Shown: one piece after another, positions 9,001-62,029 of the stretch | Numbering within the stretch: position 1 is the stretch's first letter | Layout: each line of letters opens with the position of its first letter | Assembly: GCA_002269645.1 (NCBI GenBank) | Contig: NIVC01001843.1 | Location: 167,008 to 231,007 of the forward strand | Source: Macrostomum lignano | Lineage: Eukaryota | Length of the DNA stretch: 64,000 bases | Direction: 5' to 3' | Position numbers and translations under genes: made by a program | The notes under the pieces: model-generated | Databases searched by the model: none | What the model was told of the DNA's origin: nothing | What the model saw: the letters and a program-made list of their open reading frames with translations, nothing else

Positions 9001-9697
9001 GTTGTTGAGTATCTCAACTGATCTGAAGGTTGTTGAGTATCTCAACTGATCTGAGGTTGTTGAGTATCTCAACTGATCTGAGGTTGTTGAGTATCTCAAC
9101 TGATCTGAAGGTTGTTGAGTATCTCAACTGATCTGAGGTTGTTGAGTATCTCAACTGATCTGAAGGTTGTTGAGTATCTCAACTGATCTGAGGTTGTTGA
9201 GTATCTCAACTGATCTGAAGGTTGTTGAGTATCTCAACTGATCTGAAGGTTGCTGAGTATCTCAACTGGTCTGAAGGTTTTTGAGTATCTCAACTGATCT
9301 GAGGTTGTTGAGTATCTCAACTGATCTGAAGGTTGTTGAGTATCTCAACTGATCTGAAGGTTGTTGAGTATCTCAACTGATCTGAAGGTTGTTGAGTATC
9401 TCAACTGATCTGAAGGTTGCTGAGTATCTCAACTGATCTGAAGGTTGCTGAGTATCTCAACTGATCTGAAGGTTGTTGAGTATCTCAACTGATCTGAAGG
9501 TTGTTGAGTATCTCAACTGATCTGAGGTTGTTAAGTATCTCAACTAATCTGAAGGTTGCTGAGTATCTCAACTGGTCTGAAGGTTGTTGAGTATCTCAAC
9601 TGATCTGAAGGTTGTTGAGTATCTCAACTAATCTGAAGGTTGCTGAGTATCTCAACTGATCTGAGGTTGTTGAGTATCTCAACTGATCTGAAGGTTG
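1..9697. repeat. Large satellite array, 27-bp unit CTCAACTGATCTGAGGTTGTTGAGTAT and 28-bp variant (...TGAAGG...), running off the left edge
   Basis: About 350 near-identical head-to-tail units. The palindrome GTTGAG-TAT-CTCAAC spans each unit junction. Anomalous units occur at ~3025 and ~3840, and substitutions accumulate after ~9250. Confidence 0.99.
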
Positions 9698-16000: not shown

Positions 16001-19000
16001 CCACACCTGCATCCCTGCCACATCTGTATCCCTGCCACACCTGTATCCCTGCCACACCTGTATCCCTGTCACATCTGTACCCCTGCCACACCTGTACCCC
16101 TGTCACACCTGTATCCCTGCCACACCTGTATCCCTACCACACCTGTATCCCTGCCGCTGCCACACATGAATCCCTGCCACACCTGTATCCCTGCCACATC
16201 TGTATCCCTGCCACATCTGTATCCCTGCCACACCTGTATCCCTGCCACACCTGCATCCCTGCCACATCTGTATCCCTGCCACATCTGTATCCCTGCCACA
16301 CCTGTATCCCTGCCACACCTGCATCCCTGCCACACCTGTACCCCTGTCACACCTGTATCCCTGCCACACCTGTATCCCTGCCACACCTGTATCCCTGCCA
16401 CATCTGTATCCCTGCCACACCTGTATCCCTGCCACACCTGTATCCCTGCCACACCTGTATCCCTGTCACACCTGTATCCCTGCCACACCTGTATCCCTGC
16501 CACACCTGTATCCCTGCCGCTGCCACACATGAATCCCTGCCACACCTGTATCCCTGCCACACCTGTATCCCTGCCACACCTGTATCCCTGCCACACCTGT
16601 ATCCCTGCCACACCTGTATCCCTGCCACACCTGTATCCCTGCCACACCTGTATCCCTGCCACACCTGTATCCCTGCCACACCTGTATCCCTGCCACACCT
16701 GTATCCCTGCCACACCTGTATCCCTCCCACACCTGTATCCCTGCCACACCTGTATCCCTGCCACAACTGTATCCCTGCCACACCTGTATCCCTGCCACAC
16801 CTGTATCCCTGCCACACCTGTATCCCTGCCACACCTGTATCCCTGCCACAACTGTATCCCTGCCACACCTGTATCCCTGCCACACCTGTATCCCTGCCAC
16901 ACCTGTATCCCTGCCACACCTGTATCCCTGCCACACCTGTATCCCTGCCGCTGCCACACATGAATCCCTGCCACACCTGCATCTCTGCACCGACTTTACC
17001 CCATCCCCCCTCGCAACACAGAAAATACTAATCATAAATCTTTATAAGATCATTGATAGATAATTTATTTAGTCCTGAACCGTAAACCCTAAGCCCTGAG
17101 CCTTAAACCCTAACACCAAACCTTAGCCCTGATCGAAACTCGTCTCTCAGAGTCCCTCAGAATCCCTCAGAATCCCTCAGAATCTCTCAGAATCCCTCAG
17201 AATCCCTTAGAATCCCTCAGAATCTCTCAGAATCCCTCAGAATCCCTCAGAATCCCTCAGAATCCCTCAGAATCCCTCAGAATCCCTCAGAATCCCTCAG
17301 GGTCCCACAGAATCCCCCAGAATCCTTCAGAATCCCTCAGAATCCCTTAGAATCCCTCAGAATCTTTCAGAATCCCTCAAAATCCCTCAGAATCCCTCAG
17401 AATCCCTCAAAATCCTTCAGAATCCCTCAGAATCCCTCAGAATTCCTCAGAATCCCTCAGAAGCCCTCAGAATCCTTTAGAATCCCTCAGAATCCTCCAG
17501 AATCCCTCAGAATCCCTCAGAAGCCCTCAGAATCCTTTAGAATCCCTCAGAATTCCTCAGAAGCCCTCAGAATCCCTCAGAATCCCTCAAAATCCTTCAG
17601 AATCCCTCAGAATCCCTCAGAATTCCTCAGAATCCCTCAGAAGCCCTCAGAATCCTTTAGAATCCCTCAGAATCCTCCAGAATCCCTCAGAATCCCTCAG
17701 AAGCCCTCAGAATCTCTCAGAATCCCTCAGAATCCCTCAGAAGCCTCAGAATCCTTTAGAATTCATCAGAATCCTTCAGAATCCCTCAGAATTTAAAAAC
17801 CAGCTAAACTGAATTCTCCACATTCCGTTTCAGACTGAGAAAGGTGAAATCCTCATCGCCCTGCACTACATGCCCACAGCGGAGCGCCTTATTGTAATGC
17901 TCCTAAAAGCAAACAATGTCCTAACACAAGAGCGAAGAATTCCAGGTGAGCGCTATAATCGCATACTAATTACTCAGCTCCTCTGAATAGAAATCTTATT
18001 ACTCATCAGTGAAGCTATATTCTGTACTGTTCTCTTCTCATTTGGTCTGCACAAAGTTTGCTCAAGATAATATTGTCCATCATAAAGAGAATATCGAGAG
18101 CTCGTGTTTGCCTACTTTGGCATTATATACGAGTACATGTATATACGAGCAATATGCGATGTTGAAGTATGAGTCCAGCTTGATGACGCAGAGAGGTGGT
18201 AAACATTTGTCCCGCAGTTTAAACACATAGCCGTACTAAAGTCTTCACTCGGCTTTTGTTGCAATAATAAAAGAGGTTAATGTTCTTTATTTAAGCGACG
18301 CTACGAGTTTGTTACATTCTTCATTGAGCACTAATTGACCTTCGAATGAATCTTTGTTGAAAGTCTTCTCGAAGTGCTAAACACATGAAAACACTGACGC
18401 CATCGAAACGAATCAGTGATCTTGGTGGGTGGCCCCTGTGTCTTGATTTGGTGCCCCTGTGTCTTGGTTGGGTGCCTCTGTGTCTTGGCTGGTGCCCCTG
18501 TGTCTTGGTTGGGCGCCCCTGTGTCTTGGTTGGGTGCCTCTGTGTCTTGGTTGGGTGCCTCTGTGTCTTGGTTGGGCGCCCCTGTGTCTTGGTTGGGTGC
18601 CCCTGTGTCTTGGTTGGGCGCCCCTGTGTCTTGGCTGCATGGTGCCCCTGTGTCTTGGTTGGGTGCCCCTGTGTCTTGGTTGGTGCCTCTGTGTCTTGGT
18701 TGGGTGCCTCTGTGTCTTGGTTGGGTGCCTCTGTGTCTTGGTTGGGTGCCTCTGTGTCTTGGTTGGGCGCCCCTGTGTCTTGGTTGGGTGCCCCTGTGTC
18801 TTGGTTGGTGCCTCTGTGTCTTGGTTGGGTGCCTCTGTGTCTTGGTTGGGTGCCTCTGTGTCTTGATTTGGTGCCCCTGTGTCTTGGTTGGGCGCCCCTG
18901 TGTCTTGGTTGGGTGCCCCTGTGTCTTGGTTGGTGCCTCTGTGTCTTGGTTGGGTGCCTCTGTGTCTTGGTTGGGTGCCTCTGTGTCTTGGTTGGGTGCC

Positions 19001-22000
19001 TCTGTGTCTTGGTTGGGCGCCCCTGTGTCTTGGTTGGGTGCCCCTGTGTCTTGGTTGGTGCCTCTGTGTCTTGGTTGGGTGCCTCTGTGTCTTGGTTGGG
19101 TGCCTCTGTGTCTTGATTTGGTGCCCCTGTGTCTTGGTTGGGTGCCCCTATGTCTTGGTTGGGTGCCTCTGTGTCTTGGCTGGTGCCTCTGTGTCTTGGT
19201 TGGGTGCCCCTGTGTCTTGGTTGCATGGTGCCTCTGTGTCTTGGTTGGGTGCCTCTGTGTCTTGGTTGGGTGCCCCTGTGTCTTGGTTGCATGGAGCCTC
19301 TGTGTCTTGGTTGGGTGCCTCTGTGTCTTGGTTGGGTGCCTCTGTGTCTTGGTTGCATGGTGCCTCTGTGTCTTGGTTGGGTGCCCCTGTGTCTTGGCTG
19401 GGCGCCCCTGTGTCTTGGTTGGGTGCCCCTGTGTCTTGGCTGGGTGCCCCTGTGTCTTGGTTGGGTGCCCCTGTGTCTTGGCTGGGTGCCCCTGTGTCTT
19501 GGTTGGGTGCCCCTGTGTCTTGGTTGGGTGCCTCTGTGTCTTGGTTGGGTGCCTCTGTGTCTTGGTTGGGCGCTCCTGTGTCTTGGTTGGGTGCCTCTGT
19601 GTCTTGGTTGGGTGCCTCTGTGTCTTGGTTGGGCGCCCCTGTGTCTTGGTTGGGTGCCTCTGTGTCTTGGCTGGGTGCCTCTGTGTCTTGGCTGGGTGCC
19701 TCTGTGTCTTGGTTGGGTGCCTCTGTGTCTTGGCTGGGTGCCTCTGTGTCTTGGTTGGGTGCCTCTGTGTCTTGGTTGGGCGCCCCTGTGTCTTGGTTGG
19801 GTGCCTCTGTGTCTTGGCTGGGTGCCTCTGTGTCTTGGTTGGGTGCCTCTGTGTCTTGGTTGGTGCCTCTGTGTCTTGGCTGGTGCCCCTGTGTCTTGGT
19901 TGGGTGCCTCTGTGTCTTGGTTGGGCGCCCCTGTGTCTTGGTTGGTGCCCCTGTGTCTTGGCTGGTGCCCCTGTGTCTTGGTTGGGCGCCCCTGTGTCTT
20001 GGTTGGGTGCCTCTGTGTCTTGGTTGGTGCCTCTGTGTCTTGGTTGGGTGCCTCTGTGTCTTGGTTGGGTGCCTGTGTCTTGGTTGGGCGCCCCTGTGTC
20101 TTGGTTGCATGGTGCCTCTGTGTCTTGGCTGCATGGTGCCTCTGTGTCTTGGTTGGGCGCCCCTGTGTCTTGGTTGGGTGCCCCTGTGTCTTGGTTGGGT
20201 GCCCCTGTGTCTTGGTTGGGTGCCCCTGTGTCTTGGTTGGGTGCCCCTGTGTCTTGGTTGGGTGCCTCTGTGTCTTGGCTGCATGGTGCCTCTGTGTCTT
20301 GGTTGGGCGCCTCTGTGTCTTGGTTGCATGGTGCCTCTGTGTCTTGGCTGCATGGTGCCCTGTGTCTTGGTTGGGCGCCCCTGTGTCTTGGTTGGGTGCC
20401 CCTGTGTCTTGGTTGGGTGCCTCTGTGTCTTGGTTGGGTGCCCCTGTGTCTTGGTTGCATGGTGCCTCTGTCTTGGTTGGGCGCCCCTGTGTCTTGGCTG
20501 CATGGTGCCTCTGTGTCTTGGTTGGGCGCCCCTGTGTCTTGGTTGGGCGCCCCTGTGTCTTGGTTGGGCGTCCCTGTGTCTTGGTTGGGTGCCCCTGTGT
20601 CTTGGTTGCATGGTGCCTCTGTGTCTTGGTTGGGTGCCCCTGTGTCTTGGTTTCATAATGCCTCTGTGTCTTGGTTGGGTGCCTCTGTGTCTTGGTTGGG
20701 CGCCCCTGTGTCTTGGTTGGGTGCCCCTGTGTCTTGGTTGCATGGTGCCTCTGTGTCTTGGTTGGGCGCCCCTGTGTCTTGGCTGCATGGTGCCTCTGTG
20801 TCTTGGTTGGGCGCCCCTGTGTCTTGGTTGGGCGCCCCTGTGTCTTGGTTGGGCGTCCCTGTGTCTTGGTTGGGTGCCCCTGTGTCTTGGTTGGGTGCCC
20901 CTGTGTCTTGGTTGGGTGCCCCTGTGTCTTGGTTGCATGGTGCCTCTGTGTCTTGGTTGGGTGCCCCTGTGTCTTGGTTTCATAATGCCTCTGTGTCTTG
21001 GTTGGGTGCCTCTGTGTCTTGGTTGGGCGCCCCTGTGTCTTGGTTGGTGCCTCTGTGTCTTGGTTGGGTGCCTCTGTGTCTTGGTTGGGTGCCTCTGTGT
21101 CTTGGTTGGGCGCCCCTGTGTCTTGGTTGGTGCCTCTGTGTCTTGGTTGGGTGCCTCTGTGTCTTGGTTGGGTGCCTGTGTCTTGGTTGGGCGCCCCTGT
21201 GTCTTGGTTGCTGCCTCTGTGTCTTGGTTGGGCGCCCCTGTGTCTTGGTTGCTGCCTCTGTGTCTTGGTTGCTGCCTCTGTGTCTTGGTTGGGTGCCTCT
21301 GTGTCTTGGTTGGGTGCCCCTGTGTCTTGGTTGGGTGCCCCTGTGTCTTGGTTGCTGCCTCTGTGTCTTGGTTGCTGCCTCTGTGTCTTGGTTGCTGCCT
21401 CTGTGTCTTGGTTGCTGCCTCTGTGTCTTGGCTGGTGCCCCTGTGTCTTGGTTGGCGCCCCTGTCTTGGTGGGTGCCCCCTGTTTCTCAGTTGGCGCCCC
21501 TGTGTCCTGGTTGGGCGCCCCTGTGTCCTGTTTGGCGTCCCTGTCCTGGTGTCAACTTAAAATCTTAGGTTAAGTTTCGGGAGTAGAGCAATTTATTTTT
21601 TTTGGGAGGTGGGGCAGCCACCCCTACGCCACAGCTCATAAATGCATTATACTGACTCCCAGCTAACCATCGAAATCACCGCACGCAGCTCCCTACTTAC
21701 AAGTAGTCCTACTGGCAAATGGATCGGCAGCATTCAAGAAGCGAACCAGACTGTTTGAGGAAAGTTCAAGACCAGTATTCAACGAGTCAGTGACAGTTAG
21801 CGTGCCCAGACACAGCCTAGGCCGAGTGACCCTGATCGTGTCCCTGATGAACTGTCACCTGAGGAAGCGAATCAGGCCGGACCTTGACAACTGCCTGGGC
21901 TACGTTGTCTTCTCTAGCAGCTGCTACGGCAGCGGCAAGGTGCACTGGACAGAGATGCAGAATAGGCCGCGGACTGCGCTAGCGTATTGGCATAAATTAT

Positions 22001-27435: not shown

Positions 27436-28121
27436 TAGGTCAGTGTGTCAGCAATCAAGGATTTGCCACCGCAGGCAGGCAAACTAAATATGAATAAAAA
27501 TGCTAGAAATTCACCAAATAAAGGTATAGTTTAGTAAATTAGAGAAAATAATGAAGGGTGGGGAAAATCAAATTTAATAATAAATTTAACTAATCTTAAA
27601 TTAATTTTTTTTAAATTTAAACAAATATGAGAGAAAAGCAATCTGAAGCAGTCATTAGGCCGAATAAATTTAAATGTTCTGTTTTTAAGACTTTTTTAAG
27701 TAAAAAAATATTAATTTAGTTGCCAGCACGTCCTCTTATCAGTAGTAGCTTCTTATTAATGTCAAAGTCCTCTAATCTATTTGCCTTAATTTATCATCTT
27801 AGTGTACATTCTCCAATGTACACTCTGCAATGTACGTACGCTCGTAGTTAAATGTACACTTATAAAACGTACATAGATTAGTGTACATAGCTTGTACACT
27901 TTTAAATGAACATTGCTTCATCTACACTGTTCAATGTATGTACGCGGCTTTATACGCCCTCTCCAATGTACATATCATGATGTACACGACTCTGATGCAA
28001 AAAATTTAATGTACACTCTTCAATGTACATAGCTGGGTGTACACAGCTTACTACTGCTCCAGCTAGCAACTCCAGTAGAACGCGTGCAACCTCTTGCCAA
28101 AGCAGCAATAAAATCGCGGGC

Positions 28122-31100
28122 TCACTTAAACTGACAATACGGCCGAATTAACAAAATCGGTTGAAAAGTCGTGGGCGCAGCATGGACCACCTGCTGCACT
28201 GGCTGCGCGGCCTGCTGCATCGGGCGCAAATTAAGAGTTGGCCGCACTGCGACAGACTTCTCGGCGCCACTCTCCGAAGTCAATATGGCGTTAATAGCGT
28301 CGCGAATACGCGCCATTTTGGCGCCATCAGACGATCGAACTAGCATACTGCCGTCGGGTAGAATTTGCAAGCCTTCTGGGCTACTGGGCTGTGGCTCGTC
28401 TTCGCTCAGAGGATTTAGATCGGACTCCTGCCGCTGGCGCTTCGCTGCAGTCGGCTGCGGCTGCTCCAGCTGAGCCTCCAGCTCAGCGCGCAGCGACTCC
28501 TTGAACCGGAGCTGGCGAAGGCACCAGCCAAGATCGGCAGCTGGCAGCTGGCGGAATCGTTCGGCCTTCCAGCGGGCAGCCAGGTGGGTGCACTGGCCGA
28601 TGGTGCAGCCAGTCTGGACTGGGGTCAACTGGCTGGTGAGAAACCGGAGCAGGTCGCGGGCAGGTGAGGCCACCACCCGGACCCGAAAGCTAACTCGGCC
28701 AATCAGACAGCCGAGCTGGTCGAATGCTTCAATCACGGTGATCAGATTGGCCAGGGCCAGGTGGCTGAGTCGCTGGTTGTTGCGCATGTGGTCCTGGGGG
28801 GGGGGGTTAGAGAGATCCATGGCGATTCATGGCTTTGCTGCTCTACATTTTTCTGCTACTTTCTCTTTGCTTGGCACGCATCGGAGTGTACATATCACGT
28901 TGTACATATCAGGATGTACATATCAGGGTGTTTTTAGCCGGTTTTCATAACAGGTGTACACACCAGGGTGTACATATCAGGATGTATATATCAGGATGTA
29001 CATATCAGGATGTATATATCAGGGTGTACATATCAGGGTGTACATATCAGGGTGTACATATCAGGGTGTACATAACAGGTTGTACATATCTGGGTGTACA
29101 TATCAGGGTGTGCATAACGGGTGTGCATACAGTCAAATCTGGGCGCGCATATAATCCAAATCCTCAAAAACCACAACCAACTCCCTCCCCAAAATACCTG
29201 GCAGCAGTTATAGCGCAGGGTAAGCCACATTCTGCCCGCCTCTGGCAGCCCAGTGCAGTACAGGCAGCTCTGCTGTCTGTCCGGATCCAAGTGGACCAAT
29301 CCCTCCAAACTGTGACTGGCGATGCTAACCAACAACTGGCCATTAGACACGGAGCAAGTTGAGCAGGGCTGCGGATAGTCGCCAGGCAATAAACCGATGG
29401 CCTGGCAACGAATCAGCAGCTTGCTGACTGGCACCTCGCTGCTGATGTCCAGATTTAGATGCCGCTTGCCGCTTTTGTCCTCCAGGTAGACGGTGGCCGG
29501 TACGCGAAGGTCGGCGTCCAGTTTCCGGCGGGGGAAATGCGTCAGCAGAGGATTAGGCGAAGCGGTAGCGGCGGCGGCGGCCTCGGCGGGGGGAGAGTCG
29601 GAACCGGCTGGCTGAGTATCGGGCAGGATTGCCGACTCCAACAGCTGACGGTCTTCGGCGCTGAACTGGGAGGTGCGAGAGTTTAAAAGGGCAATTCTAA
29701 GAAATAGCTCAGAAAGCAATTTTAATTCGCTAATTTCAGGGACGCCAAACAGTGTGTATCAGGAACATCCCACTTTCTATTTTTATCAGAAAGAATAAGC
29801 CTAAAAGGTGTTTGGAAGCAATACTTTTTATTAGGGATATTTCTAAGAAACCACTTTCACCAAGAGTATTTCTAGGAAACTACTTTTATTAAAGGCCTCT
29901 CTCTCTCTCCATTTCTAAGAAACCAAAGATATTTCTAAGAAAAAACTTTAACTAACGATATTTTTCATATTTCTAAGAAAACATTTTTGTTAAATATATT
30001 TCTAAGAAAGCAATTTCACTACACAAACGATATTTCTAAAAAACCAGTTTTTAAAAAGATATTTCTAAGAACCAGCTTTATAATTAAAGATATTTCTAAA
30101 AAACAACTTTCACTAAGGATATTTTTAAGATTAACCGCGCTCAATAACGAGATTTCTAAGATTCAGGCTCTTATTAAGGAAAAAATATTCCTTTAAACTA
30201 ATTCTTATTACAAAAGTATTGCTTGAGTTAAGATAGCTCGTGAAGTGGGAAGTACGACAATTTTTTGACTGACAACGTCACAACGATTTAGGGTACGTTG
30301 GGGGTTTAGGTTAGGGTTTAGGATGGGGTTAGGGATTAGAATAGGGGTTTATGTTAGGGTAAAGTTTCAGGTTAGGCTAAGACCCTAATTTAAACGGGGG
30401 GCATTACAAACCCGAAAGTGCTAGCAACGCCCAACGCTATTTTAGTTTTCGGAGTTATGATATTTCGAGTTTATAATGGCGATCCATTAAGATAGACTAC
30501 TGTAACAAGTTCAATCCGGATTAAACTCACGCCAAAGTAGTTTTCGCCGCGCTCAAAAATTCGATTGTGCAGACTGTCACCGCGGCATTCGGTCAGAGTC
30601 TGCGGCCGAACCGTGAAGCCGCAGTTATTAGGCAGATCATTGTAGGACTCGAATGAGGCTAGCGGCTGCTGCTGCTGTCGTTCTTTGTCGGGGCTGTCCG
30701 GGTGGTCCTCTGGCTGAGCCAGCTCGTCCATGCAGCCCCAGATAGCCGGGTCGTTCTGAGTAGCAATTCCATTTTGATAGAGTTGCTTAGAGGGGGCATT
30801 GTAATTCGATAGTGACTGTCAAGTGTCTGTGAGTGATTGACGGGTAGCTGAAGGATCAGTGGGGTAGCTGAAGGATCAGTGGGGGTAGCTGAAGGATCAG
30901 TGGGGGTAGCTGAAGGATCAGTGGGGTAGCTGAATGATCAGTGGGGGTGGCTAAATGATCAGTGGGGGTGGCTGAATGATCAGTGGGGGTGGCTGAATGA
31001 TCAGTGGGGGTGGCTGAATGATCAGTGGGGGTGGCTGAATGATCAGTGGGGGTGGCTGAAGGATCAGTGGGGTAGCTGAATGATCAGTGGGGGTGGCTGA

Positions 31101-33621
31101 ATGATCAGTGGGGGTGGCTGAATGATCAGTGGGGGTGGCTGAATGATCAGTGGGGGTGGCTGAATGATCAGTGGGGGTGGCTGAAGGATCAGTGGGGTAG
31201 CTGAATGATCAGTGGGGGTGGCTGAATGATCAGTGGGGGTGGCTGAATGATCAGTGGGGGTAGCTGAATGATCAGTGGGGGTGGCTGAATGATCAGTGGG
31301 GGTGGCTGAATGATCAGTGGGGGTGGCTGAATGAACAGTGGGGGTAGCTGAAGGATCAGTGGGGTAGCTGAAGGATCAGTGGGGGTGGCTGAATGATCAG
31401 TGGGGGTGGCTGAATGATCAGTGGGGGTAGCTGAAGGATCAGTGGGGGTGGCTGAAGGATCAGTGGGGTAGCTGAAGGATCAGTGGGGGTAGCTGAAGGA
31501 TCAGTGGGGTGGCTGAAGGATCCCAATGAAAAAGGTACCTAGGCCAAGAGGCGTTAAAGAATAACTTCACTTGCGTCGCCCCGGAGCTGTTGCAGAAAAC
31601 AGAGGTAAAATAGCGCGCTAGAGTCGCTGTAAACTGTAGAGTCACTGAGTTGTGTGTGAAGCGCATTTGATTTATTTATTAGTCACATCTCTAGCAAAAG
31701 TTTAGCGCCAAAACAAGGATTTTGGACATTTCTACAAGTCACGTGACCGCTTGTGACGCAACAGTCGCCTCCGCCGCATTATGTTATCTGATACATGTAC
31801 ATGTTCAACCAGAAGAAGTGATTCAGAAGAAATATAAAGCAGTAATGATTACCTGACCGCCGCATACTTGCAGAACCTGCTGTTGAGACGGAGCCTGATA
31901 GCATGACTGAACATGCTGATTAGGATTCTGCTGCTGAAACTGCAAGAAATGTGACTGCCAGTCTTCAAACTCAATGTTAAATTGTTGCTGACATTGTTGT
32001 TGCTGTTGTTGCTGCTGGTGGTACAGCGTTAGCTGCTTATAACAAGGCGACTCAGGTAAATTTGAATTGCTCAACGAGTAATTGCCGCAAGATACGCTCG
32101 AGGAATATGGCGATGCCCTGCAGCGGGTGGGGATTTGGGAATTAAGTTTTATTAAAGCAACACAACAAGAGCGACCGTTCACTGAGGATCGACTCTTACT
32201 GAGTGAGGATCTGGACTCTGCTGTAGAATGAGTCAATAATGATCTGGACTCTGCTGTAGAATGAGTCAGTGAGGATCTGGACTCTGCTGTAGAATGAGTC
32301 AATGAGGATCTGGACTCTGCTGTAGAATGAGTCAGTGAGGATCTGGACTCTGCTGTAGAATGAGTCAGTGAGGATCTGGACTCTGCTGTAGAATAAGTCA
32401 ATGAGGATCTGGACTCTACTGTAGAATGAGTCAGTGGGGATCTGGACTCTGCTGTAGAATGAGTCAATGAGGATCTGGACTCTGCTGTAGAATGAGTCAG
32501 TGAGGATCTGGACTCTGCTGTAGAATAAGTCAATGAGGATCTGGACTCTACTGTAGAATGAGTCAGTGGGGATCTGGACTCTGCTGTAGAATGAGTCAAT
32601 GAGGATCTGGACTCTGCTGTAGAATGAGTCAGTGAGGATCTGGACTCTGCTGTAGAATAAGTCAATGAGGATCTGGACTCTACTGTAGAATGAGTCAGTG
32701 GGGATCTGGACTCTGCTGTAGAATGAGTCAATGAGGATCTGGACTCTACTGTAGAATAAGTCAATGAGGATCTGGACTCTACTGTAGAATGAGTCAGTGG
32801 GGATCTGGACTCTGCTGTAGAATGAGTCAGTGAGGATCTGGACTCTGCTGTAGAATAAGTCAATGAGGATCTGGACTCTACTGTAGAATGAGTCAGTGGG
32901 GATCTGGACTCTGCTGTAGAATGAGTCAATGAGGATCTGGACTCTGCTGTAGAATGAGTCAGTGGGGATCTGGACTCTGCTGTAGAATGAGTCAGTGAGG
33001 ATCTGGACTCTGCTGTAGAATGAGTCAGTGAGGATCTGGACTCTGCTGTAGAATGAGTCAGTGAGGATCTGGACTCTGCTGTAGAATGAGTCAGTGAGGA
33101 TCTGGACTCTGCTGTAAAATGAGTTAATGAGGATCTGGACTCTGCTGTAGAATGAGTCAGTGGGGATCTGGACTCTGCTGTAGAATGTAGAATGAGTCAG
33201 TGGGGATCTGGACTCTGCTGTAGAATGTGTCAATGGGGATCTGGACTCTACTGTAGAATGAGTCAATGAGGATCTGTAGAAAGGGTCAATGAGGCTGTAA
33301 ACCCTAACCCAAGCTCAACAATGTCAATAAGGAAGTAGCTCAGGATTAGGAACTTATTAGCTAAAAGATCATTTAGAAGAAAGAAGAAAGCTTTCTTCAG
33401 CTAGAAGAAATAATTTTTTTTAGAATTCAAACACGGTACTAAATCAACGATGTTGAATGTTTTAAATTTAAAACTAGCCTATAGTGCATTTACAAGAATT
33501 TTATAATTGCAACTTACGCTCCGGAGAGTGACAGAAACAGCGAACTGCTGCTTCCGGGAGAGTCGGACAGACCGTAAGTTGACGAAGCTGGTCTCGTACT
33601 CGCACTAGGAGCTGTTGTCAT
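28122..33621 (-). CDS. Divergent p53-family-like transcription factor, 5 exons, about 592 aa
   Basis: Exons read on minus are 33621-33518, 32117-31868, 30815-30531, 29665-29198 and 28793-28122. All are GT-AG with consistent phases (2,0,0,0), total 1779 nt, and contain no internal stop. [16 protein letters not shown] aligns with p53 [29 protein letters not shown] with YMCNSSCMGGMNR, and [13 protein letters not shown] with the DBD start. The gene model is better supported than the family call, which rests on manual alignment only. Confidence 0.75.
28885..29115. repeat. 14-bp repeat GTACATATCAGG(G/A)T in intron 4 of the p53-like gene
   Basis: About 15 units. Confidence 0.93.
29830..30170. repeat. 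Degenerate GATATTTCTAAGAAA-based repeat in intron 3 of the p53-like gene
   Basis: About 10 recurrences of ATTTCTAAGAA at roughly 30-35 bp spacing. Confidence 0.75.
30845..31522. repeat. 20/21-bp minisatellite GCTGAA(T/G)GATCAGTGGGG(G)T(G/A) in intron 2 of the p53-like gene
   Basis: About 32 units. Confidence 0.97.
32200..33285. repeat. 33-bp minisatellite GAGGATCTGGACTCTGCTGTAGAATGAGTCA(G/A)T in intron 1 of the p53-like gene
   Basis: About 32 units. The in-frame unit length explains the [14 protein letters not shown]. Confidence 0.97.
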
Positions 33622-35958: not shown

Positions 35959-37851
35959 TTATTGTTCTTCGCAGGGGATGCTCCGGTTGCGTAGCTTACT
36001 GCGATCCGGCACAATGCCCGGCTCAATGCGCTGGAATGGGTGCGTGGGAATTGCATTGTGATTGCATGCAGAACACCTAAGCAACTGGCTGAACCCCTGA
36101 CACGAAGTATACAGATACCTGACACAAACTATACAGACACCTGACACAAAGTATACAGACACCTGACACAAAGTATACAGATACCTGACACAGAGTATAC
36201 AGATACCTGACACAAACTATATGGACACCTGACACAAACTGTACAAACACCTGACGCAAACTATCCAGATACCTGACACAAACTGTACAGACACCTGACA
36301 CAAACTATCCAAAAATCTGACACAAGCAATACAGACACCTGACACAAACTATCCAGAAACCTGACACAAGCTATCCAGACACCTGACACAAACTTTACAG
36401 ACACCTGACACAAACTATACAAACACCTGACACAAACTATACAAACACCTGACACAAACTATACAAACACCTGACACAAACTATACAGACACCTGAAACA
36501 AGCTATACAGATACCTGACACAAACAATACAGACACCTGACACAAACTATACAGATACCTGACACAAGCAATACAGACACCTGACGCAAACTGTACAGAC
36601 ACCTGACGCAAACTATCCAGACACCTGACCCACCTCGGCAGGTTGCAGCAGCTGCAGCAGCCAGACAAGCGCCAGATTAAGCAGGGCAAAGATGAGGAAA
36701 ATTTTGCCACCAACGGGACCGCAAGCTGTGAGATAGTTGGCCAGCCTATGCCTGGTCGGCTCGGGACCCCGGCGTCGAGTACCCGCCTGTAGACGCACTC
36801 AGTCCTCAGGGCGACATTGCGCCACGTGTAAATATCGCGAACCGACTCGTGCAGCCGGTGAAAGTCCTCGGGCTGCCGGCGACCGTCGGGGCCTTGGCGA
36901 CACTCGGCGATGGCCTGTTCAAGACCGTCAGCCAATGAGGTCGCATCTGGCTCAGCTAGCCGGATCAGGTCAGACGGCAGAACCTCGGGATGCCGCCAAC
37001 ATTGGTGCTGACCACCGACAGGCCGCAGCTCGCACCTTCCAGGATGGCCATGCAGAACGCTTCGGTTAGCGACGTATTTAGAAAGATGTCGCCTCTGACC
37101 AGGTGGGCTCGCACCTGAAAAATTTGGGGGATTATCGGGTCACTGAGCTGGTGAACATCTTGGATTAGTGTTATTACTGGAAGGTTAAGTTGCCTACCAT
37201 ACCCCCTGTGCCTTCCCCATACCCCTGTGCCTTCACCATACCTCTGTGCCTTCCCCATACTCCTGTGCCTTCCCCATACCCTTTGCCTTCCCCATACTTT
37301 TTGTGCCTTCTCTATACCCATTTGTGCCTTCCCCATACCCCCTGGGCCTTCCCTATACCCCTTGTGCCTTTCCCATACCCCCCGTGGCCTTCCTCATACC
37401 CTGTGCCTTCCCTATACCCCCTGTGGCCTTCCTCATACCCCGTGCCTTACCCATACTCATTCTTCCCCATACCCCCTGCACCTGTGCCTTCCCAATACCC
37501 CCTGTTTACGGGCATCAATTTGCTACCTCACCTGATGATGGGGCACCTGGCCCTGCAGCAGCACCCGGTCCTGAATGCCCAGCCGCTCCCGCAACTCCTC
37601 CAGCACCAGCCGTTTCGGCCCGTCGCCGCCGATTAAAAATCGAACGTCAGAGTGACGCTGGCAAATGATCGGGATGACCCGGGACAGCAGGTCCACGCCT
37701 TTGCGGTACACAAGGCGGCTCAGCACCACTATGGTTACTGCGGGTGATTTGCATGTATCTATGTCTGTCTGTCTGTCTGTCTGTCTGCCTACCTGTCTGT
37801 CTATCTGTCTGTCTATCTGTCTGCCTGTCTGCCTACCTGTCTGTCTGTCTA

Positions 37852-37890
<39 letters not shown>

Positions 37891-37915
37891 ATCTGTCTGT
37901 CTACCTGTCTGTCTA

Positions 37916-37988
<73 letters not shown>

Positions 37989-39560
37989 GTCTATTTTATT
38001 GCCTCCGTGTCTGTCTGTCCATCTATCTACTCCATCAAAAGATAAACGCACTGTAATTAGTATCTCGCTGATCCGGGTCCGGCGTGAACACATCAGCATC
38101 GATAGCGTTGGGAATGACAGAGATGCGACTGGGGCACAGCATTGCGCGTAGTGCCGTATTTTCTTTGCTGAAATGATAGTGCAAACTTGTTTTAATAGGT
38201 CATTTTTTTCTTGTACATTTTTCGAAGAATTCACCGAGAATACTACTGGAAGTAAGGTAAAAGAGAAATGCGAATGCGATCCAAAAAATTATTTCGCACT
38301 CGAAGTTAAAGAATTGTCAGTAGCGACGAGAGGATATCTTAAGGCCAGTAATAGAGGAAGCTGGCTCAGCAACTGAGGATCTGAGAGGCTGGCCCAGCAA
38401 CTGAGGATCTGAGAGGCTGGCCTAGCAACTGAGGATCTGGGAGGCTGGCCCAGCAACTGAGGATCTGAGAGGCTGGCCCAGCAACTGAGGATCTGGGAGG
38501 CTGGCCCAGCAACTGAGGATCTGGGAGGCTGGCCCAGCAACTGAGGATCTGGGAGGCTGGCCCAGCAACTGAGGATCTGAGAGGCTGGCCCAGCAACTGA
38601 GGATCTGGGAGGCTGGCCCAGTTACTGAGGATCTGGGAGGCTGGCCAAGCAACTGATGATCTGAGAGGTTTAATGTAAACAGAACTGAACAAGTTATCAA
38701 AAAAGATCTTTACCTGGTATGCGATACGCAAATTACGTGACAGGTATCGCTCAAGATTCCATTGAGCAGTTTGTTAGTCAGGATGGAGCTGACATCGGCA
38801 AAGCCGAACAGCGAATGATCGGTGAAGACGGTGGGAAGGCCGAGTGTGCGGGCGTGCAGCAGAGTCTGGTTGGCCAGAGCGCTGAAGGCCGAGTGGCCGT
38901 GGACCAGGCCGACTCGTTCGCGAATGAGCACCTGTCTGACTAGAGGTAGCGTTAGCAGAACCGTAGGCAAAACGCACTGGTTGTAGAAGGGCAGGAATGG
39001 CAAATAGTACACCTGTGATTGATGATAAACGAGTGACTAAGAATGATTAATGACCAACTAATGACACAGGGAATGATTGATGACTAAATAATGACACAGG
39101 GAATGATTAATGACCAACTAATGACACAGGGAATGATCAATGACCAACTAATGACACAGGGAATGATCAATGACCAACTAATGACACAAGGGAATGATCA
39201 ATGACAAACTAATGAGCAACTAGTGAAAGGAAATCACCAAAATCCCCAGACAGAGACTGTAGATCTGATTGTAATTAATCAGCCACATATAAATGACCAA
39301 CTAATGATTCAAAAATATTTTAAGCACAGCTCAAAGTTACCAACCTTCAGCCCATTCATCATCCATCGCACTCCTCGCCTTTCACTATTTTTTCCATAGG
39401 CATGGGTGATCACAATAACCCTGTGGCCCAAGCTGATTAAGCACTGGGCTAGCTGGTAGATGTGTGTCTCAACACCACCCATATTAGGAAAAAAGAAATC
39501 AGAAACCATGGCGATGCAAATTTTTTTGTTGATGACATCCTTGTCATTGATGTCTCCCAT
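35959..39560 (-). CDS. PIGA: Phosphatidylinositol N-acetylglucosaminyltransferase catalytic subunit (GPI-GnT, GT4 family), 6 exons, about 463 aa after two inferred 1-nt corrections
   Basis: Exons are 39560-39345, 39012-38714, 38167-38052, 37737-37532, 37114-36634 and 36030-35959. Hallmark motifs are [75 protein letters not shown] and the TM segment [15 protein letters not shown]. Exon 5 needs frame changes at ~36988 and ~36764. Confidence 0.96.
36095..36630. repeat. 22-bp minisatellite AGACACCTGACACAAACTATAC in PIGA intron 5
   Basis: About 24 units starting right at the donor. Confidence 0.96.
37195..37505. repeat. ~19-20-bp repeat CCCCATACCCCTGTGCCTT in PIGA intron 4
   Basis: About 15 diverged units. 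Confidence 0.92.
37760..38020. repeat. (CTGT)n microsatellite in PIGA intron 3
   Basis: Direct reading. Confidence 0.95.
38365..38668. repeat. 28-bp minisatellite CAGCAACTGAGGATCTG(A/G)GAGGCTGGCC in PIGA intron 2
   Basis: About 10 units. Confidence 0.96.
39045..39210. repeat. 30-bp repeat GAATGATTAATGACCAACTAATGACACAGG in PIGA intron 1
   Basis: About 5 units. Confidence 0.92.
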
Positions 39561-41101
39561 GGTTGAGACATTGGGTGCCAAATTAGGCAAATCAGATATA
39601 GTGTCTGAGTTCTGTAATCAATAGTTTAAATAAATTACTTGAAATAATAATTTTTGTAATCAGTTAAATTTTTTTAAAAGTAAAAACCTTTGTAAACATT
39701 TTTATATAGTTAGATTTATATACATTACTAATGTTAGGAAAAAATGCTAGGAGTGTTTGCATTTTAACAGCATTTTACATCATATATAACTAATATCTAT
39801 ACTAATTATTGTCTACTTTTTGTATTTTTCAATTAGTAAATTACTTATAGAAAGTGAGGTGTTATGAATTTGATATATTGTATGCTTCCAATCATAGATG
39901 CGCAACTGCTGGCTGACCTGGCCACCGTAAATTGTGCACATCAGAGTGATGTATGGTTGAGATAGGATAGTAGGGTTGAGGTATAAAAACTTCAAGGGTG
40001 GGCTAAGATGAATTGAAGGAACAGGTGCCAACACAAGGTCTCAATTGAGCCTGTTGGGTGCATGTCAGATATAGAGGTGCTTTTGTGCTTGCTTTGTTTA
40101 GATAAAGTGAGGGTAGGGTAGTAGGGCAGAGGTGAACACGCTTCACACTACACTCTAAATTGTCAAAAAGAGATGTCAAAACTGATTTCATTGTAAGAGT
40201 TGAAAGATAGGGCTTAGATGCCAACACAATGTCTCAAAATAACAAAATTGTGTGCATGATGGAGGTGTCAACATGATGTCTTAAAATAACAAAATCATGT
40301 GCATGTTGGGGGTGATGTGGGATGGGGGTTGTTCTATTTTAACTTTGAAAACTTGTTTTATAGATGACAAAGTGTCCACTCCACACTAAGTCACTTTGTC
40401 ATCCACCCTCTGAGATATTGGACAGATCGTCATCTACATAATGAAGTTGTAAGATGACAAAGTGTCCAGGTAACAATGACAAAGTATATAGGTCCAGCAT
40501 AACTAAATATTTTCATCATATTATTTTTCATAGCTACTTTGCTTTTGATCACTTTGTCATCCAATCTGACGAAATGGAATCCGACGATCTGACCAGTGAC
40601 CACACATTTTCTAATCCCAGCATTCCCAGGATATTGACAGAATACGGGATTTTGTGACCCCTACTTACACTTGGCAATTTAGTAAAAGTTTTTAAATAAA
40701 AACTAATTCGACATCATTTTGGTTACTATAGGCCCTAGACCCTAGTACAATTAGGCTACTACTACTGGACCTGTCAACTAGAATTAGCTAACTAGTGGCT
40801 GGCTGTTGCTAAACCAGTCTGCAGTCGTCGCTAGAGAACTCTTAAGGCCTTTTCATATTGCTTGTTCTGGTTCTAGAACCAGATCCAATTTGTAAAGTAT
40901 AACTTTTTGTCTCCTAAACTAGAGGGATATAAGTGCTTTAAAGTTGTGATTATTGAATGGCAATAGCCAAAAAGAAAATGAAAAATTGTGCAAAGTGAAG
41001 CTGAAAGGCAGTCAAATACTGAGCAAAGTTAAATAGTTAATATTGCTTTTTTTCTTAGAAGATCCGAATCGATTCTGGTTATGGAATTGGTAATGTGAAA
41101 A

Positions 41102-45725: not shown

Positions 45726-48700
45726 ATGGGTGCAGATCAGAGCAGACCAGATGATCAAGATGGACAAAATTGGCAGAATAGCAACAGTGCCAATGCTGCT
45801 AGCAGCAACAATAGCAACAACAATGCTACCTCCAATAGTATAAGTGAACCCATGGGCAACAACTTTGTGCAGAGCTTGTCTTCAACTCATAGACAGGCTG
45901 GTAGGCAGCAGACAGCTCAGTTGCCGCAGTCTCAACCAGTGCTTACTAGTAGTAGTAGTAATTTTGCAGCAGCTCTGTCCACTGCTACAGTGGCTAGTAT
46001 GAGTGGCAATGGTGCAGTTGGCCCTGTCCAGTCTCGCACACTGCCACATCACTTTGCTAGACCACCGCCTGCTCATTATCAGCAGCATCATCAACACCAG
46101 CTGGCGCAAGCAGTTGCTGGTGCTGCCCAAATTCCACCTCGTCAAGTTCCGCATCAGCACCATACTCCAGCAAGACTGCCTCATCATCATGTTGAAAATA
46201 GTACGGCAAATAATAATAATAATACTTTGCAGTTTATTAAGCATCATCGAATGCCAGACAGGCTGCCTGCACATCAGCATGGTAAGTATTTTGTCTGTAT
46301 GTGGGTTTTTCTGACAGCCTAGAAGTTTATTTAGTGGTTTCGAGCTGACATCCCAGCAGTTTATCATTGGGTTGCGAGCTGACATCCCAGCAGTTTATTA
46401 TTGGGTTTCGAGCTGACATCCCAGCAGTTTATCATTGGGTTTCGAGCTGACATCCCAGCAGTTTATCATTGGGTTGCAAGCTGACATCCCAGCAGTTTAT
46501 TATTGGGTTGCAAGCTGACATCCCAGCAGTTTATCATTGGGTTGCAAGCTGACATCCCAGCAGTTTATCATTGGGTTTTGAGCTGACATCCCAGCAGTTT
46601 ATTATTGGGTTTCGAGCTGACATCCCAGCAGTTTATCATTGGGTTTCGAGCTGACATCCCAGCAGTTTATCATTGGGTTGCAAGCTGACATCCCAGCAGT
46701 TTATTATTGGGTTGCAAGCTGACATCCCAGCAGTTTATCATTGGGTTGCGAGCTGACATCCCAGCAGTTTATCATTGGGTTGCAAGCTGACATCCCAGCA
46801 GTTTATCATTGGGTTGCAAGCTGACTAGTTGATTTATTTCATGCAAAACTTCAGCAACACCTGGCCAAGTAGCAACAGCAGCCGCCGCCACAGCCCCACC
46901 GCAGTTGCCGCCGCAGCCGCAGCCACTCTGCAGGACGCCAACAGTGGCCGTCGCGATCGCGATCCCGATCCATATCGATATCGAATAGATAGGCGCCAAT
47001 CAGATAAGCCGAGGATACAGCTGATACAGCAGAAGCACGAGCATAGCGGAGCCGGTGCTAGACAAAAAAATGAAGTTTATCATCCACAGGTAAACTTGAT
47101 TGCTTGGCAAATTGTTTTATTTCATGAGAGAGGACTGCAATCTTTAGGGTTATTAAGTAATTTGATTGCTAGATAAAATTTTGCAAGGTAAATTGCGATA
47201 AAATGGGAATCATATTGAAAGATAACTTATGGGTATTATTTAGGATAAATTATAATTTTGGGATAAATTGAAATATATATTTTACTTAAATTATCAAGGA
47301 CTTTAAGAAATGAATTGTGCATAATACTCACGGATAAATTATGGATGATATTTCGGGATAAATTATGAATGATATTTGGGGATCAATTATGAATGATATT
47401 TGAGGATAAATTATGGATGATATTTCGGGATAAATTATGAATGATATTTGGGGATAAATAATGAATGATATTTCAGGATAAATTATGGATGATATTTCGG
47501 GATAAATTATGGATGATATTTCGGGATAAATTATGGATGATATTTCGGGATAAATTATGGATAATATTTCAGGATAAATTATGGATGATATTTCGGGATA
47601 AATTATGGATGATATTTCGGGAGAAATTATGGATGATATTTGGGATAAATTATGAATGATTTTTGGGGATCAATTATGAATGATATTTGAGGATAAATTA
47701 TGGATGATATTTCGGGATAAATTATGAATGATATTTGGGGATAAATAATGAATGATATTTCAGGATAAATTATGGATGATATTTCGGGATAAATTATGGA
47801 TGATATTTCGGGATAAATTATGGATGATATTTCGGGATAAATTATGGATAATATTTCAGGATAAATTATGGATGATATTTCGGGATAAATTATGGATGAT
47901 ATTTCGGGAGAAATTATGCATGTTTTGAGGGATAAATTATGGATGATATTTCTGGATAAATTATGGATGATATTTGGGATAAATTATGAATGATTTTTTG
48001 GATAAATTATGGATGATATTTCGGGATGAATTATGGATGATATTTCGGGATAAATTATGAATGATATTTAGGGATAAATTATGGATGATATTTCGGGATA
48101 AATTATGGATGATATTTAGGGATAAATTATGGATGATATTTAGGGATAAATTATGGATGATATTTCGGGATAAATTATGGATGATATTTAGGGATAAATT
48201 ATGGATGATATTTCGGGATAAATTATGGATGATATTTCGGGAGAAATTATGGATGATATTTTGGGAGAAATTATGGATGAAATTTCGGGAGAAATTATGC
48301 ATGTTATTGAGGAATAAATTTTGAATGATACTCGTAATTAGGGATGAAATATTGGATGACAATGGGGGAAAATTATCGATGATGATTAGCGGATAATTAT
48401 GGATAACATGGGGGGATAAAATTGTAGATGATATTAGCGATACATTATTTATATTTTGAGGATAAAGTCATAAGTACTAGCACACTATATGCATTAGTTA
48501 AAGTTGCCGCCACTCCATTCCGCTATTGCTGCCGCAGGTGGAAGCAATCAGCCCAGCACCTGAGGAGAATCTCGCCGATCAGCGTCTCCAGAAAGAGAAA
48601 ACCGAAGTTGGCTACAGACTAATCAGCATCGAGAATGACATTAAAAGTGTCCAAGACCAGCTATTGGCAAAAACTGCCGAACGAGACAAATTATTAAGCC

Positions 48701-50462: not shown

Positions 50463-50504
<42 letters not shown>

Positions 50505-51095
50505 CAACAGGCTCAGCCTCATCACAGGCATTTGCCTCAGCATGGCGCTCCGACACTGCCGCCGCCACCGCAGCCGCCGCCTTCGTGGCTCCCGGGCATG
50601 GCTGGCATGTCCCAGACTGACATCTACGCGGCTAAGGCTGAGCAAACTTATCGAGATGAGGTTGAAAGCTATCGAAAATTTCGCGATCGAGCGCTTAGCG
50701 ACGCCGAGCGGACTCGCACAAGCTCGGAGGCCAGCCAGTTGTACGTGCTGATGAAGAAGCGACAGGCTATGGCCGCTGCTGCTGCAGCTTCCTCTACTGC
50801 CGCAACGGTTCCTCCTCAGCTGCCTGACGCCATGCCTCCGCCGGCGCACGCCGCCCCGCAGAAGAAGCCGTTGGTGCCTCAGGCGCCGCCTCCGCCGCCG
50901 CCTGCTTCGCCGCTGCAACAACAGCAGCAGCAGCAGCTGGCCGCTCTGGCCCAGTCTATGCAGCACAAGCACCCTCACCTGCATGGCCAGCTCAAGCCGC
51001 ATCACTCTCATCAGCACAGTCAGTCACAGCAGCAGCAGCAGCAGCAAGTTCAACAACAAATCAATTTTGTTGCTGATATACACGCTAAATTGCTA

Positions 51096-51135
<40 letters not shown>

Positions 51136-61963: not shown

Positions 61964-62029
61964 GTGAGTTGGGGGGGGGGGCTACATGCAGGCCTTCAGC
62001 TGACTGGATGGGGTAGGGAGGGAGGTAGG

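What the first reader, a model, noticed from the sequence alone, without database searches (positions are those of the whole stretch)
28122..33621. Hidden, highly divergent p53-family gene split across repeat-filled introns
Seen: five exons splice in frame into a 592-aa protein that no single ORF in the track reveals. Established: the p53 DBD ends in GRxSFEVRVCACPGRD, with DNA contacts R248, R273, A276 and R280. Here [16 protein letters not shown] keeps the R273, A276, P278, R280 and D281 equivalents, and HMRNNQR keeps the M243 and R248 spacing. Upstream, [20 protein letters not shown] aligns with [21 protein letters not shown] and LLIRCQAI with TRVRAMAI. Downstream come an NLS-like AAKRQRQ and a strand-turn-helix [23 protein letters not shown] placed like the tetramerisation domain. 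Inference: a lineage-specific p53 paralog, possibly too divergent for routine annotation.
Basis: partly seen in the sequence, partly recalled or inferred. Interest (0 to 1): 0.85.

Follow-up and report, generated by a model that had tools for sequence, protein, structure and literature searches.

The report
Possible divergent p53-like flatworm gene
This is a real, expressed and already annotated five-exon gene of the flatworm Macrostomum lignano; about 70 residues of its protein resemble the DNA-contacting end of the p53 DNA-binding domain above chance, but the rest of the domain and the fold could not be confirmed.

Summary
The window is Macrostomum lignano (assembly Mlig_3_7, contig NIVC01001843.1). 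The flagged span 28122-33621, minus strand, is exactly the annotated gene BOX15_Mlig013162g1 (PAA63439.1, 'hypothetical protein', 577 aa). The gene is therefore not hidden. Its GenBank model comes from an RNA-seq-guided annotation.

All five exons have GT-AG borders. All four introns hold tandem repeats. The length is 577 aa (annotated) or 587 aa (an upstream in-frame acceptor), not 592.

Two further intact copies lie beside the same PIGA neighbour. The most diverged pair gives dN/dS = 0.12, so the gene is under purifying selection.

**For p53 homology.** Residues 338-412 match p53 residues 212-282 (S7/S8-L3-S9-S10-H2):
- phmmer against the PDB gives only p53 in the top 60 hits (E = 0.002 for the whole protein, 1e-4 for the segment).
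- hhalign gives 84% probability.
- My vertebrate p53 sub-profile scores 27 bits, against a maximum of 14.5 in 3000 shuffles.
- Equivalents of M243, R248, R273, A276, P278, R280 and D281 are kept.

**Against or untested.**
- Pfam P53 and P53_tetramer give no hit.
- The N-terminal half of the domain and the 'tetramerisation' stretch show no signal.
- Similarity falls to 9 bits against a p63-type domain.
- Both AlphaFold models were low-confidence, and Foldseek found no p53 fold.
- No homologues exist outside M. lignano in the databases searched.

Verdict: a plausible (about 55%) but unproven, highly divergent p53-like transcription factor.

The parts
33518..33621 (-). Exon 1 (ATG at 33621; 104 nt; Ser/Thr-rich N-terminus)
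   Evidence: GT donor follows at 33517-33516. 100% and 99% identical in the two other genomic copies.
31853..32117 (-). Exon 2 (265 nt). Q-rich region with the acidic-hydrophobic motif [15 protein letters not shown] (aa 81-95). A possible activation domain, by inference only.
   Evidence: AG acceptor and GT donor. Motif coordinates. No family match.
30531..30785 (-). Exon 3. Two in-frame AG acceptors lie 30 nt apart: 30785 gives 587 aa, and 30755 (used by GenBank) gives 577 aa.
   Evidence: P0003 equals the window model minus [10 protein letters not shown].
29198..29665 (-). Exon 4 (468 nt, aa 209-364). Holds the Ala/Pro-rich linker and the Cys-rich, strand-prone region that would have to form S1-S8 of a p53-like sandwich. 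The last ~27 residues (338-364) begin the p53-like segment.
   Evidence: No detectable similarity to the p53 N-terminal half.
28122..28793 (-). Exon 5 (672 nt including the stop codon, aa 365-587). Holds the rest of the p53-like segment, a helical region, KRQRQ, and the C-terminal tail.
   Evidence: This is the only one of 561 window ORFs that hits a vertebrate p53 profile (E = 9.5e-6 to 1.5e-4).
28650..29278 (-). The p53-like segment, aa 338-412, split by intron 4. It aligns with p53 212-282 (S7/S8, L3, S9, S10, start of H2). It includes HMRNNQR (28770-28790) and [16 protein letters not shown] (28653-28700).
   Evidence: phmmer against the PDB, hhalign, own profiles and shuffles. Coordinates.
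32118..33517 (-). Intron 1, with a 33-bp tandem repeat x32 (32202-33276)
   Evidence: Length is 1400 nt here, against 633 and 577 nt in the other copies.
30786..31852 (-). Intron 2, with a 21-bp tandem repeat x33 (30842-31522)
29666..30530 (-). Intron 3, with 29-31-bp AT-rich repeats (29967-30130)
28794..29197 (-). Intron 4 (phase 0, between Q364 and D365, inside the L3-equivalent), with the 14-bp repeat GTGTACATATCAGG x17.6

Best explanation
The locus is a functional, RNA-supported, protein-coding gene of Macrostomum lignano (BOX15_Mlig013162g1).

Its most likely product is a fast-evolving nuclear transcription factor. The DNA-contacting surface of that factor descends from the p53-family DNA-binding domain.

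Inferred mechanism: the segment at aa 338-412 would form the S8-L3-S9-S10-H2 loop-sheet-helix part of the domain. In that reading:
- R372 (R248 equivalent) reaches into the minor groove.
- R401 (R273 equivalent) contacts the backbone.
- A404, S405 and R408 (A276, C277 and R280 equivalents) read the major groove, so the protein would bind a p53-type CWWG-centred half-site.
- D409 (D281 equivalent) would buttress R408.
- H366 and C362/C363 would supply the L3 zinc ligands.
- The Q-rich N-terminus with its acidic-hydrophobic motif would act as the activation domain.

Shown here: the gene structure, its intactness and the selection on it, and the above-chance similarity of about 70 residues. Inferred only: the fold of the whole domain, zinc binding, DNA specificity, oligomerisation, and the biological role.
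For: Gene reality:
- Identical to an annotated GenBank gene built from RNA-seq.
- Three intact copies with GT-AG introns sit next to PIGA. For window against L002, dS = 0.043, dN = 0.0053, dN/dS = 0.12.

p53 likeness:
- Whole-protein phmmer against 177,635 PDB sequences gives only p53 core domains in the top 60. The best E is 0.002, aligning aa 347-432.
- The segment alone gives E = 1.1e-4.
- hhalign of the Macrostomum alignment against 17 vertebrate p53 sequences gives probability 84%, E = 7.3e-6, 36% identity over 69 columns. It places H366 on C242, M367 on M243 and R372 on R248.
- My own p53 profile scores 16.8 bits (per-comparison E = 1.6e-7).
- The C-terminal sub-profile scores 27.1 bits, against a maximum of 14.5 in 3000 shuffles.
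- Global alignment z-score is 10.8.
- Of 561 ORFs in the window, only exon 5 hits the p53 profile.
- From S215 to D281, 16 of the columns invariant across p53 and a p63-type domain are also kept here.

No rival family: no other family matches any part of the protein.
Against: - Pfam PF00870 and PF07710 give no hit, even for the isolated segment.
- Similarity is uneven across the family: 22-26 bits to mammalian p53, 12-19 bits to bird, amphibian and fish p53, and only 9 bits to a p63-type domain. An ancient homologue should resemble all of them about equally.
- The N-terminal half of the domain shows no signal.
- AlphaFold2 gave pLDDT 35.8 without an alignment, and 38.9 even with 17 p53 rows in the alignment. 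Foldseek found no p53-like fold in either model.
- An exhaustive HMMER search of 1.84 billion representatives found no relative outside M. lignano. No intermediate sequences therefore link it to p53.
- Intron positions (after aa 208 and aa 364) do not coincide with human TP53 intron positions. This rests on my own knowledge of TP53 exon borders.
Confidence: 0.55

Rival explanations
1. Chance resemblance. The gene is a genuine Macrostomum-restricted orphan protein with no evolutionary relation to p53. The ~70-residue match is a statistical accident, made to look better by a few mammal-specific residues.
For: - Pfam P53 is silent.
- The score drops from 26 to 9 bits moving from mammalian p53 to a p63-type domain.
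- Nothing is detectable in the N-terminal half or in the oligomerisation region.
- AlphaFold did not produce a p53 fold, even with p53 rows in the alignment.
- There are no intermediates in 1.84 billion representatives.
- Patterns could be 'found' at several alternative registers by eye, which shows how easily such matches arise.
Against: - E = 0.002 against the whole PDB, with all top 60 hits from one family.
- 0 of 3000 shuffles reach half the margin.
- hhalign gives 84% probability.
- The matched residues are the family's invariant DNA-contact and structural positions, not random ones.
Confidence: 0.35
2. It is not an extra paralog. It is the M. lignano orthologue of the flatworm p53-1 / Smed-p53 gene, diverged beyond Pfam recognition. 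It would then work in the stem-cell-to-epidermis lineage, as in planarians and schistosomes.
For: - Flatworm p53-1 orthologues are reported widely among flatworms, and a p53-type motif is reported as a conserved epidermal-lineage marker motif in a three-species study that includes M. lignano (PMC9478680; PMC11398382).
- No paper I could search describes a canonical M. lignano p53.
Against: No comparison with any flatworm p53 sequence was possible here. The database tools returned only vertebrate p53 or nothing. This is a sub-case of the best explanation and inherits its uncertainty.
Confidence: 0.15
3. A decaying or non-functional duplicate (pseudogene) that retains a fragment of a p53 domain.
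For: Only a fragment of the domain is recognisable.
Against: All three copies keep a full open frame and all splice sites. dN/dS is 0.12 (17 synonymous against 7 non-synonymous changes). The model comes from transcript evidence.
Confidence: 0.03

Closest known systems
Vertebrate p53 core DNA-binding domain (e.g. PDB 1TSR/1TUP, 2AC0, mouse 1HU8)
   Same: Residues 338-412 align with p53 212-282 at about 36% identity. Equivalents of P223, E224, G226, T231, Y234, N235, M243, R248, G262, L265, G266, R267, F270, R273, A276, P278, R280 and D281 are kept.
   Different: - C275 becomes V, C277 becomes S, R282 becomes L and R249 becomes L.
- C242 becomes H, and the C238 register is ambiguous.
- A 6-residue insertion (SHLALA) sits between the R248 equivalent and S9.
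- There is no recognisable S1-S6, L1 (K120) or L2 (C176/H179), and no tetramerisation domain.
- It is below the Pfam threshold.
C. elegans CEP-1 (a p53 homologue that escaped ordinary similarity searches). This comparison rests on my own knowledge, not on a test here.
   Same: The scenario is the same. A lineage-restricted, very divergent protein in which mainly the DNA-contact and zinc-site residues of the C-terminal half of the domain are recognisable.
   Different: CEP-1 has a solved p53-type fold and demonstrated function. Neither exists for this protein.
Flatworm p53 homologues: Smed-p53, and S. mansoni p53-1 and p53-2 (PMC9478680)
   Same: Same phylum. Flatworm p53 genes are known to be divergent and to include lineage-specific paralogs (p53-2, found only in parasites).
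   Different: Those genes are described as having a recognisable DBD by SMART. This one has none by Pfam. That study reports no p53-2 orthologue in 19 free-living flatworm datasets.

Membership tests
p53 family (p53/p63/p73, Pfam PF00870) | Score above the curated Pfam P53 gathering threshold | tested here: not met
   No PF00870 hit at E <= 10 for the full model, for P0003, for the 175-aa domain region, or for the 89-aa segment. Caveat: HMMER filters drop most matches with E above ~0.1.
p53 family | Loop-sheet-helix and L3 signature (S8-L3-S9-S10-H2) with the DNA-contact residues R248, R273, A276 and R280, plus D281 | tested here: met
   - phmmer against the PDB: E = 0.002 and 1.1e-4, top 60 hits all p53.
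- hhalign: 84%, placing R372 on R248, R401 on R273, A404 on A276, R408 on R280 and D409 on D281.
- 27.1 bits against a shuffle maximum of 14.5.
p53 family | N-terminal half of the beta-sandwich (S1-S7, L1 with K120, L2) | tested here: not met
   No hit to the p53 94-211 profile. An unbiased placement scan puts the p53 121-163 and 163-211 profiles elsewhere, and not significantly. The PDB gives no hit.
p53 family | Zinc site: C176, H179 (L2) and C238, C242 (L3) | tested here: inconclusive
   hhalign puts H366 on C242, with C362/C363 flanking a gap at C238. The L2 ligands cannot be aligned. Candidates are C295, C309 and C312, by MAFFT or by eye only.
p53 family | p53-type immunoglobulin-like beta-sandwich fold | tested here: inconclusive
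   AF2 single sequence gave pLDDT 35.8. AF2 with p53 rows in the alignment gave pLDDT 38.9 and pTM 0.36. Foldseek against the PDB gave no hit with E <= 0.001, and p53 ranked only 32nd (E = 0.49). Low-confidence models can neither confirm nor refute.
p53 family | C-terminal tetramerisation domain (PF07710) | tested here: not met
   No Pfam hit. No hit to my p53 319-360 profile. MAFFT lines up DG...R..M.R..N.A.L, but this has no statistical support.
p53 family | Sequence-specific binding to RRRCWWGYYY-type sites and transactivation | not testable with these tools
   Requires EMSA, SELEX or DAP-seq, and reporter assays.
Flatworm p53-1 orthologue group | Reciprocal best hit or phylogenetic grouping with Smed-p53 and Sm-p53-1 | not tested
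   No flatworm p53 sequence could be retrieved. Searches returned vertebrate p53 only or nothing.

The most novel reading that the evidence does not exclude
This triplicated orphan is the only p53-family gene of Macrostomum, an early-branching flatworm. It would have diverged beyond profile recognition, much as CEP-1 has in nematodes. Alternatively, it is a free-living-flatworm p53 paralog that earlier surveys missed. Either way it would add a data point on what flatworm p53 originally did: control of the stem-cell-to-epidermis lineage, or a genotoxic stress response.
Probability: 0.15. Interest if true: 0.6.

Novelty: new member of a known kind. Interest (0 to 1): 0.4.

Why it matters
M. lignano is a transgenic, regeneration-capable and reportedly cancer-free flatworm model. 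No p53 gene of this species is described in the papers I could search.

Work on schistosomes and planarians has reopened the question of the ancestral role of p53. That work found no second p53 in free-living flatworms (PMC9478680).

If this 'hypothetical protein' really carries a p53-type DNA-reading surface, it is a direct candidate for RNAi, in situ and DAP-seq experiments in an early-branching flatworm. It would also be an example of how far the domain can drift while keeping its contact residues.

If the resemblance is chance, the locus is just one of many Macrostomum orphan genes with repeat-laden introns.

Tried and rejected
- **First splice model.** My first model, with the exon-4 acceptor at 29696, was out of frame. 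The acceptor at 29665 restores the frame.
- **Full-length search of 5.8 billion proteins.** It found only the M. lignano cluster. The candidate list was probably swamped by poly-Q words.
- **Exhaustive phmmer of exons 4+5 against 1.84 billion representatives.** It found only the protein itself and one multi-stretch hit that looks like low complexity.
- **Domain-only search at E <= 10.** It found nothing.
- **Search with human p53 to obtain invertebrate or flatworm relatives.** The 120 hits listed were vertebrate p53 plus a few uncharacterised or artificial entries, one carrying a p63-type domain; none was invertebrate. No flatworm comparison or phylogeny was therefore possible.
- **AF2 without an alignment, and Foldseek on that model.** Both were uninformative.
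- **AF2 with p53 rows in the alignment.** This is circular by design, so I treated it as modelling only. It was still low-confidence, and Foldseek found no p53 fold.
A z-score of 3.4 appears only if the position is fixed beforehand. It disappears in an unbiased scan.
- **UniProt name 'Rep-A_N domain-containing protein' for the truncated older model P0004.** Pfam does not reproduce it.
- **Pseudogene reading.** Rejected on dN/dS and intact frames.
- **Literature searches for a described M. lignano p53 or for these gene identifiers.** Nothing was found.


Full report
**What is there**

The window is eukaryotic and extremely rich in tandem repeats: 70 TRF rows, including a 27-bp satellite of 355 copies.

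Reading the minus strand from 33621, I built a five-exon model with canonical GT-AG borders and polypyrimidine tracts. The exons are 33621-33518, 32117-31853, 30785-30531, 29665-29198 and 28793-28122. They join in frame into 587 aa. Each of the four introns contains a tandem array.

**Identity of the locus**

A protein search returned PAA61369.1, 'hypothetical protein BOX15_Mlig020042g1 [Macrostomum lignano]', at 97% identity. Its cluster also holds PAA54084.1, PAA63439.1 and a truncated older model.

PAA63439.1 (P0003, 577 aa) is identical to my model except for ten residues. GenBank uses an in-frame acceptor 30 nt further downstream in exon 3.

Its contig, GCA_002269645.1 NIVC01001843.1, is byte-identical to window 18122-43621. 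The annotated gene spans exactly 28122-33621.

The GenBank annotation of this assembly was derived from a genome-guided RNA-seq transcriptome (StringTie/TACO/TransDecoder). Simple and tandem repeats make up 15% of the genome (PMC5730564).

So the gene is neither hidden nor unannotated, its junctions have transcript support, and repeat-filled introns are normal here. The stated length of 592 aa is wrong; it is 577 or 587.

**Is it a working gene?**

The assembly holds three copies. This fits the redundancy reported for the DV1 line.
- All three lie next to a PIGA glycosyltransferase gene.
- All have intact frames and GT-AG at all four introns.
- Intron lengths differ mainly through repeat copy number.

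Between the window copy and the most diverged copy there are 17 synonymous and 7 non-synonymous differences. That gives dS = 0.043, dN = 0.0053 and dN/dS = 0.12, which indicates purifying selection.

**Is it p53-like? Evidence for**

- phmmer of the whole protein against all PDB sequences gives p53 core domains as all 60 listed hits, with best E = 0.002. It aligns aa 347-411/432 with p53 ~220-281.
- The 89-aa segment alone gives E = 1.1e-4, again only p53.
- A profile I built from 17 vertebrate p53 sequences scores 16.8 bits over aa 347-411.
- A sub-profile of p53 212-292 scores 27.1 bits, while 3000 shuffles of the query reach at most 14.5.
- A global alignment has z = 10.8.
- hhalign of the Macrostomum alignment against the p53 alignment gives 84% probability and E = 7.3e-6 for aa 338-412 against p53 212-282.
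A six-residue insertion follows, then [10 protein letters not shown] on PILTIITLED, and [16 protein letters not shown] on GRNSFEVRVCACPGRD.
- Scanning all 561 stop-to-stop ORFs of the window with the p53 profiles picks out only exon 5.
- No other family matches any part of the protein in Pfam or the PDB.

**Is it p53-like? Evidence against, or missing**

- Pfam's curated P53 and P53_tetramer models give no hit at E <= 10, even on the isolated segment.
- The similarity is uneven: 22-26 bits to mammalian p53, 12-19 to bird, amphibian and fish p53, and 9 bits to a p63-type domain. Part of the score therefore comes from residues that are not family-wide.
- The N-terminal half of the domain is not detectable. 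There is no hit to a p53 94-211 profile and no PDB hit.
A free placement scan puts that profile best at aa 542-583, and not significantly.
- The proposed tetramerisation stretch gives no hit.
- The structural test was uninformative:
  - AF2 on the single sequence gave pLDDT 35.8, and Foldseek found nothing.
  - AF2 with 17 p53 rows in the alignment, a deliberately favourable and circular set-up, still gave pLDDT 38.9 and pTM 0.36. Foldseek again found no p53 fold.
- An exhaustive HMMER search of 1.84 billion representatives and two word-indexed searches found no relatives outside M. lignano. No deep alignment or intermediate sequences are therefore available.
- The search with human p53 returned no invertebrate sequence. 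I could make no comparison with flatworm p53 genes, and I could not determine whether M. lignano has a canonical p53.

**Weighing**

A database-wide E of 0.002 falls on a single family. That family's invariant DNA-contact residues are the matched positions, and hhalign gives 84%. Together these make real but very remote homology somewhat more likely than chance.

Against this stand the silent curated profile, the taxon-dependent score, the missing N-terminal half and the failed models, which keep the case open.

My estimates:
- About 55% that the protein carries a p53-derived DNA-binding surface.
- About 35% that the resemblance is chance in an orphan protein.
- The remainder for other readings; the pseudogene reading is about 3%.
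- The orthologue reading (15%) is a sub-case of the 55%, not an addition to it.

On the membership criteria the gene cannot be filed as a p53-family member. The Pfam threshold, the N-terminal half and the tetramerisation domain are not met, and the fold and zinc site are inconclusive. It can be called a candidate.

**Likely mechanism if the homology is real (inference)**

The protein would be a nuclear transcription factor with these parts:
- A Q-rich N-terminus with an acidic-hydrophobic motif (aa 81-95) as the activation region.
- A central zinc-stabilised sandwich.
- R372 reaching into the minor groove.
- R401, A404, S405 and R408, with D409, on the loop-sheet-helix reading a CWWG-type core.
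- A helical region and a basic KRQRQ patch after the domain.

Oligomerisation is unknown.

**Literature context**

Flatworm p53 genes regulate the stem-cell-to-epidermis lineage. A second, parasite-specific paralog handles genotoxic stress, and no such paralog was found in 19 free-living flatworm datasets (PMC9478680).

A p53-type motif is reported as a conserved epidermal-lineage marker motif in a three-species multiome study that includes M. lignano (PMC11398382).

I found no paper describing an M. lignano p53 or mentioning these gene identifiers.

**Verdict**

The p53 interpretation is partly supported: the C-terminal third of the domain matches, and the rest does not. If true, it would be a new, very divergent member of a known family. 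Interest is moderate.

Noticed in passing
window 30755-30785 (minus strand): Exon 3 has two in-frame AG acceptors 30 nt apart. The upstream one adds [10 protein letters not shown]. GenBank models of all three copies use the downstream one.
   Followed up: partly
window introns, compared with L002:6001-12182 and L003:6001-10664: The three genomic copies differ mainly in intron length, through tandem-repeat copy number. Intron 1 is 1400, 633 and 577 nt. Intron 2 is 1097, 2213 and 1076 nt. Intron 4 is 404, 789 and 403 nt. Exons are 96-100% identical; the 96% is exon 2, whose Q-run is 9 nt longer in L003.
   Followed up: yes
window 27800-28030 and 28886-29129: The palindromic core TGTACA is clustered in intron 4 (14-bp repeat GTGTACATATCAGG) and again, irregularly spaced, just downstream of the stop codon. 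ATGTACA occurs 34 times in the window against 9.4 expected, mostly in these two places.
   Followed up: partly
window 1-9697: A 27-bp satellite (CTCAACTGATCTGAGGTTGTTGAGTAT) of about 355 copies at 97% identity runs off the window start. It creates many spurious long ORFs in several frames.
   Followed up: no
window 15380-16963 (+): An ORF with a genuine C2 domain (Pfam E = 2.7e-12) reads straight on into a 17-bp tandem array (15843-16949). This gives a 527-aa ORF with a repetitive Pro/Cys/His tail. It is unclear whether the tail is coding or whether the ORF simply runs through the repeat.
   Followed up: partly
window 18420-21535: A GC-rich 21-bp array (about 147 copies, strong AT skew) generates ORFs of up to 1050 aa on both strands. 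These are almost certainly non-coding.
   Followed up: no
window ~36400-39700 (minus); L001:4011-6657: A PIGA-type GPI-anchor glycosyltransferase gene is the upstream neighbour. The same neighbour sits beside all three copies of the p53-like gene, so these are segmental or whole-genome duplicates.
   Followed up: yes
window 48526-52301 (+): A long Q/A-rich ORF pair with a SANT/Myb domain (Pfam E = 2.7e-7). From memory, it resembles a nuclear-receptor-corepressor (NCoR/SMRT)-type protein.
   Followed up: partly
window 61577-62038 (+): An exon of a transmembrane amino-acid transporter (Pfam Aa_trans, E = 2.4e-13).
   Followed up: partly
protein P0004 (UniProt A0A1I8I2E8): An older, truncated 350-aa model of the same gene is named 'Rep-A_N domain-containing protein' in UniRef. 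A Pfam scan finds no domain in it.
   Followed up: yes
(tool behaviour): A search with only the domain region (187 aa) returned no hit at E <= 10, not even the gene's own cluster. That negative result is therefore weaker than it looks.
   Followed up: no
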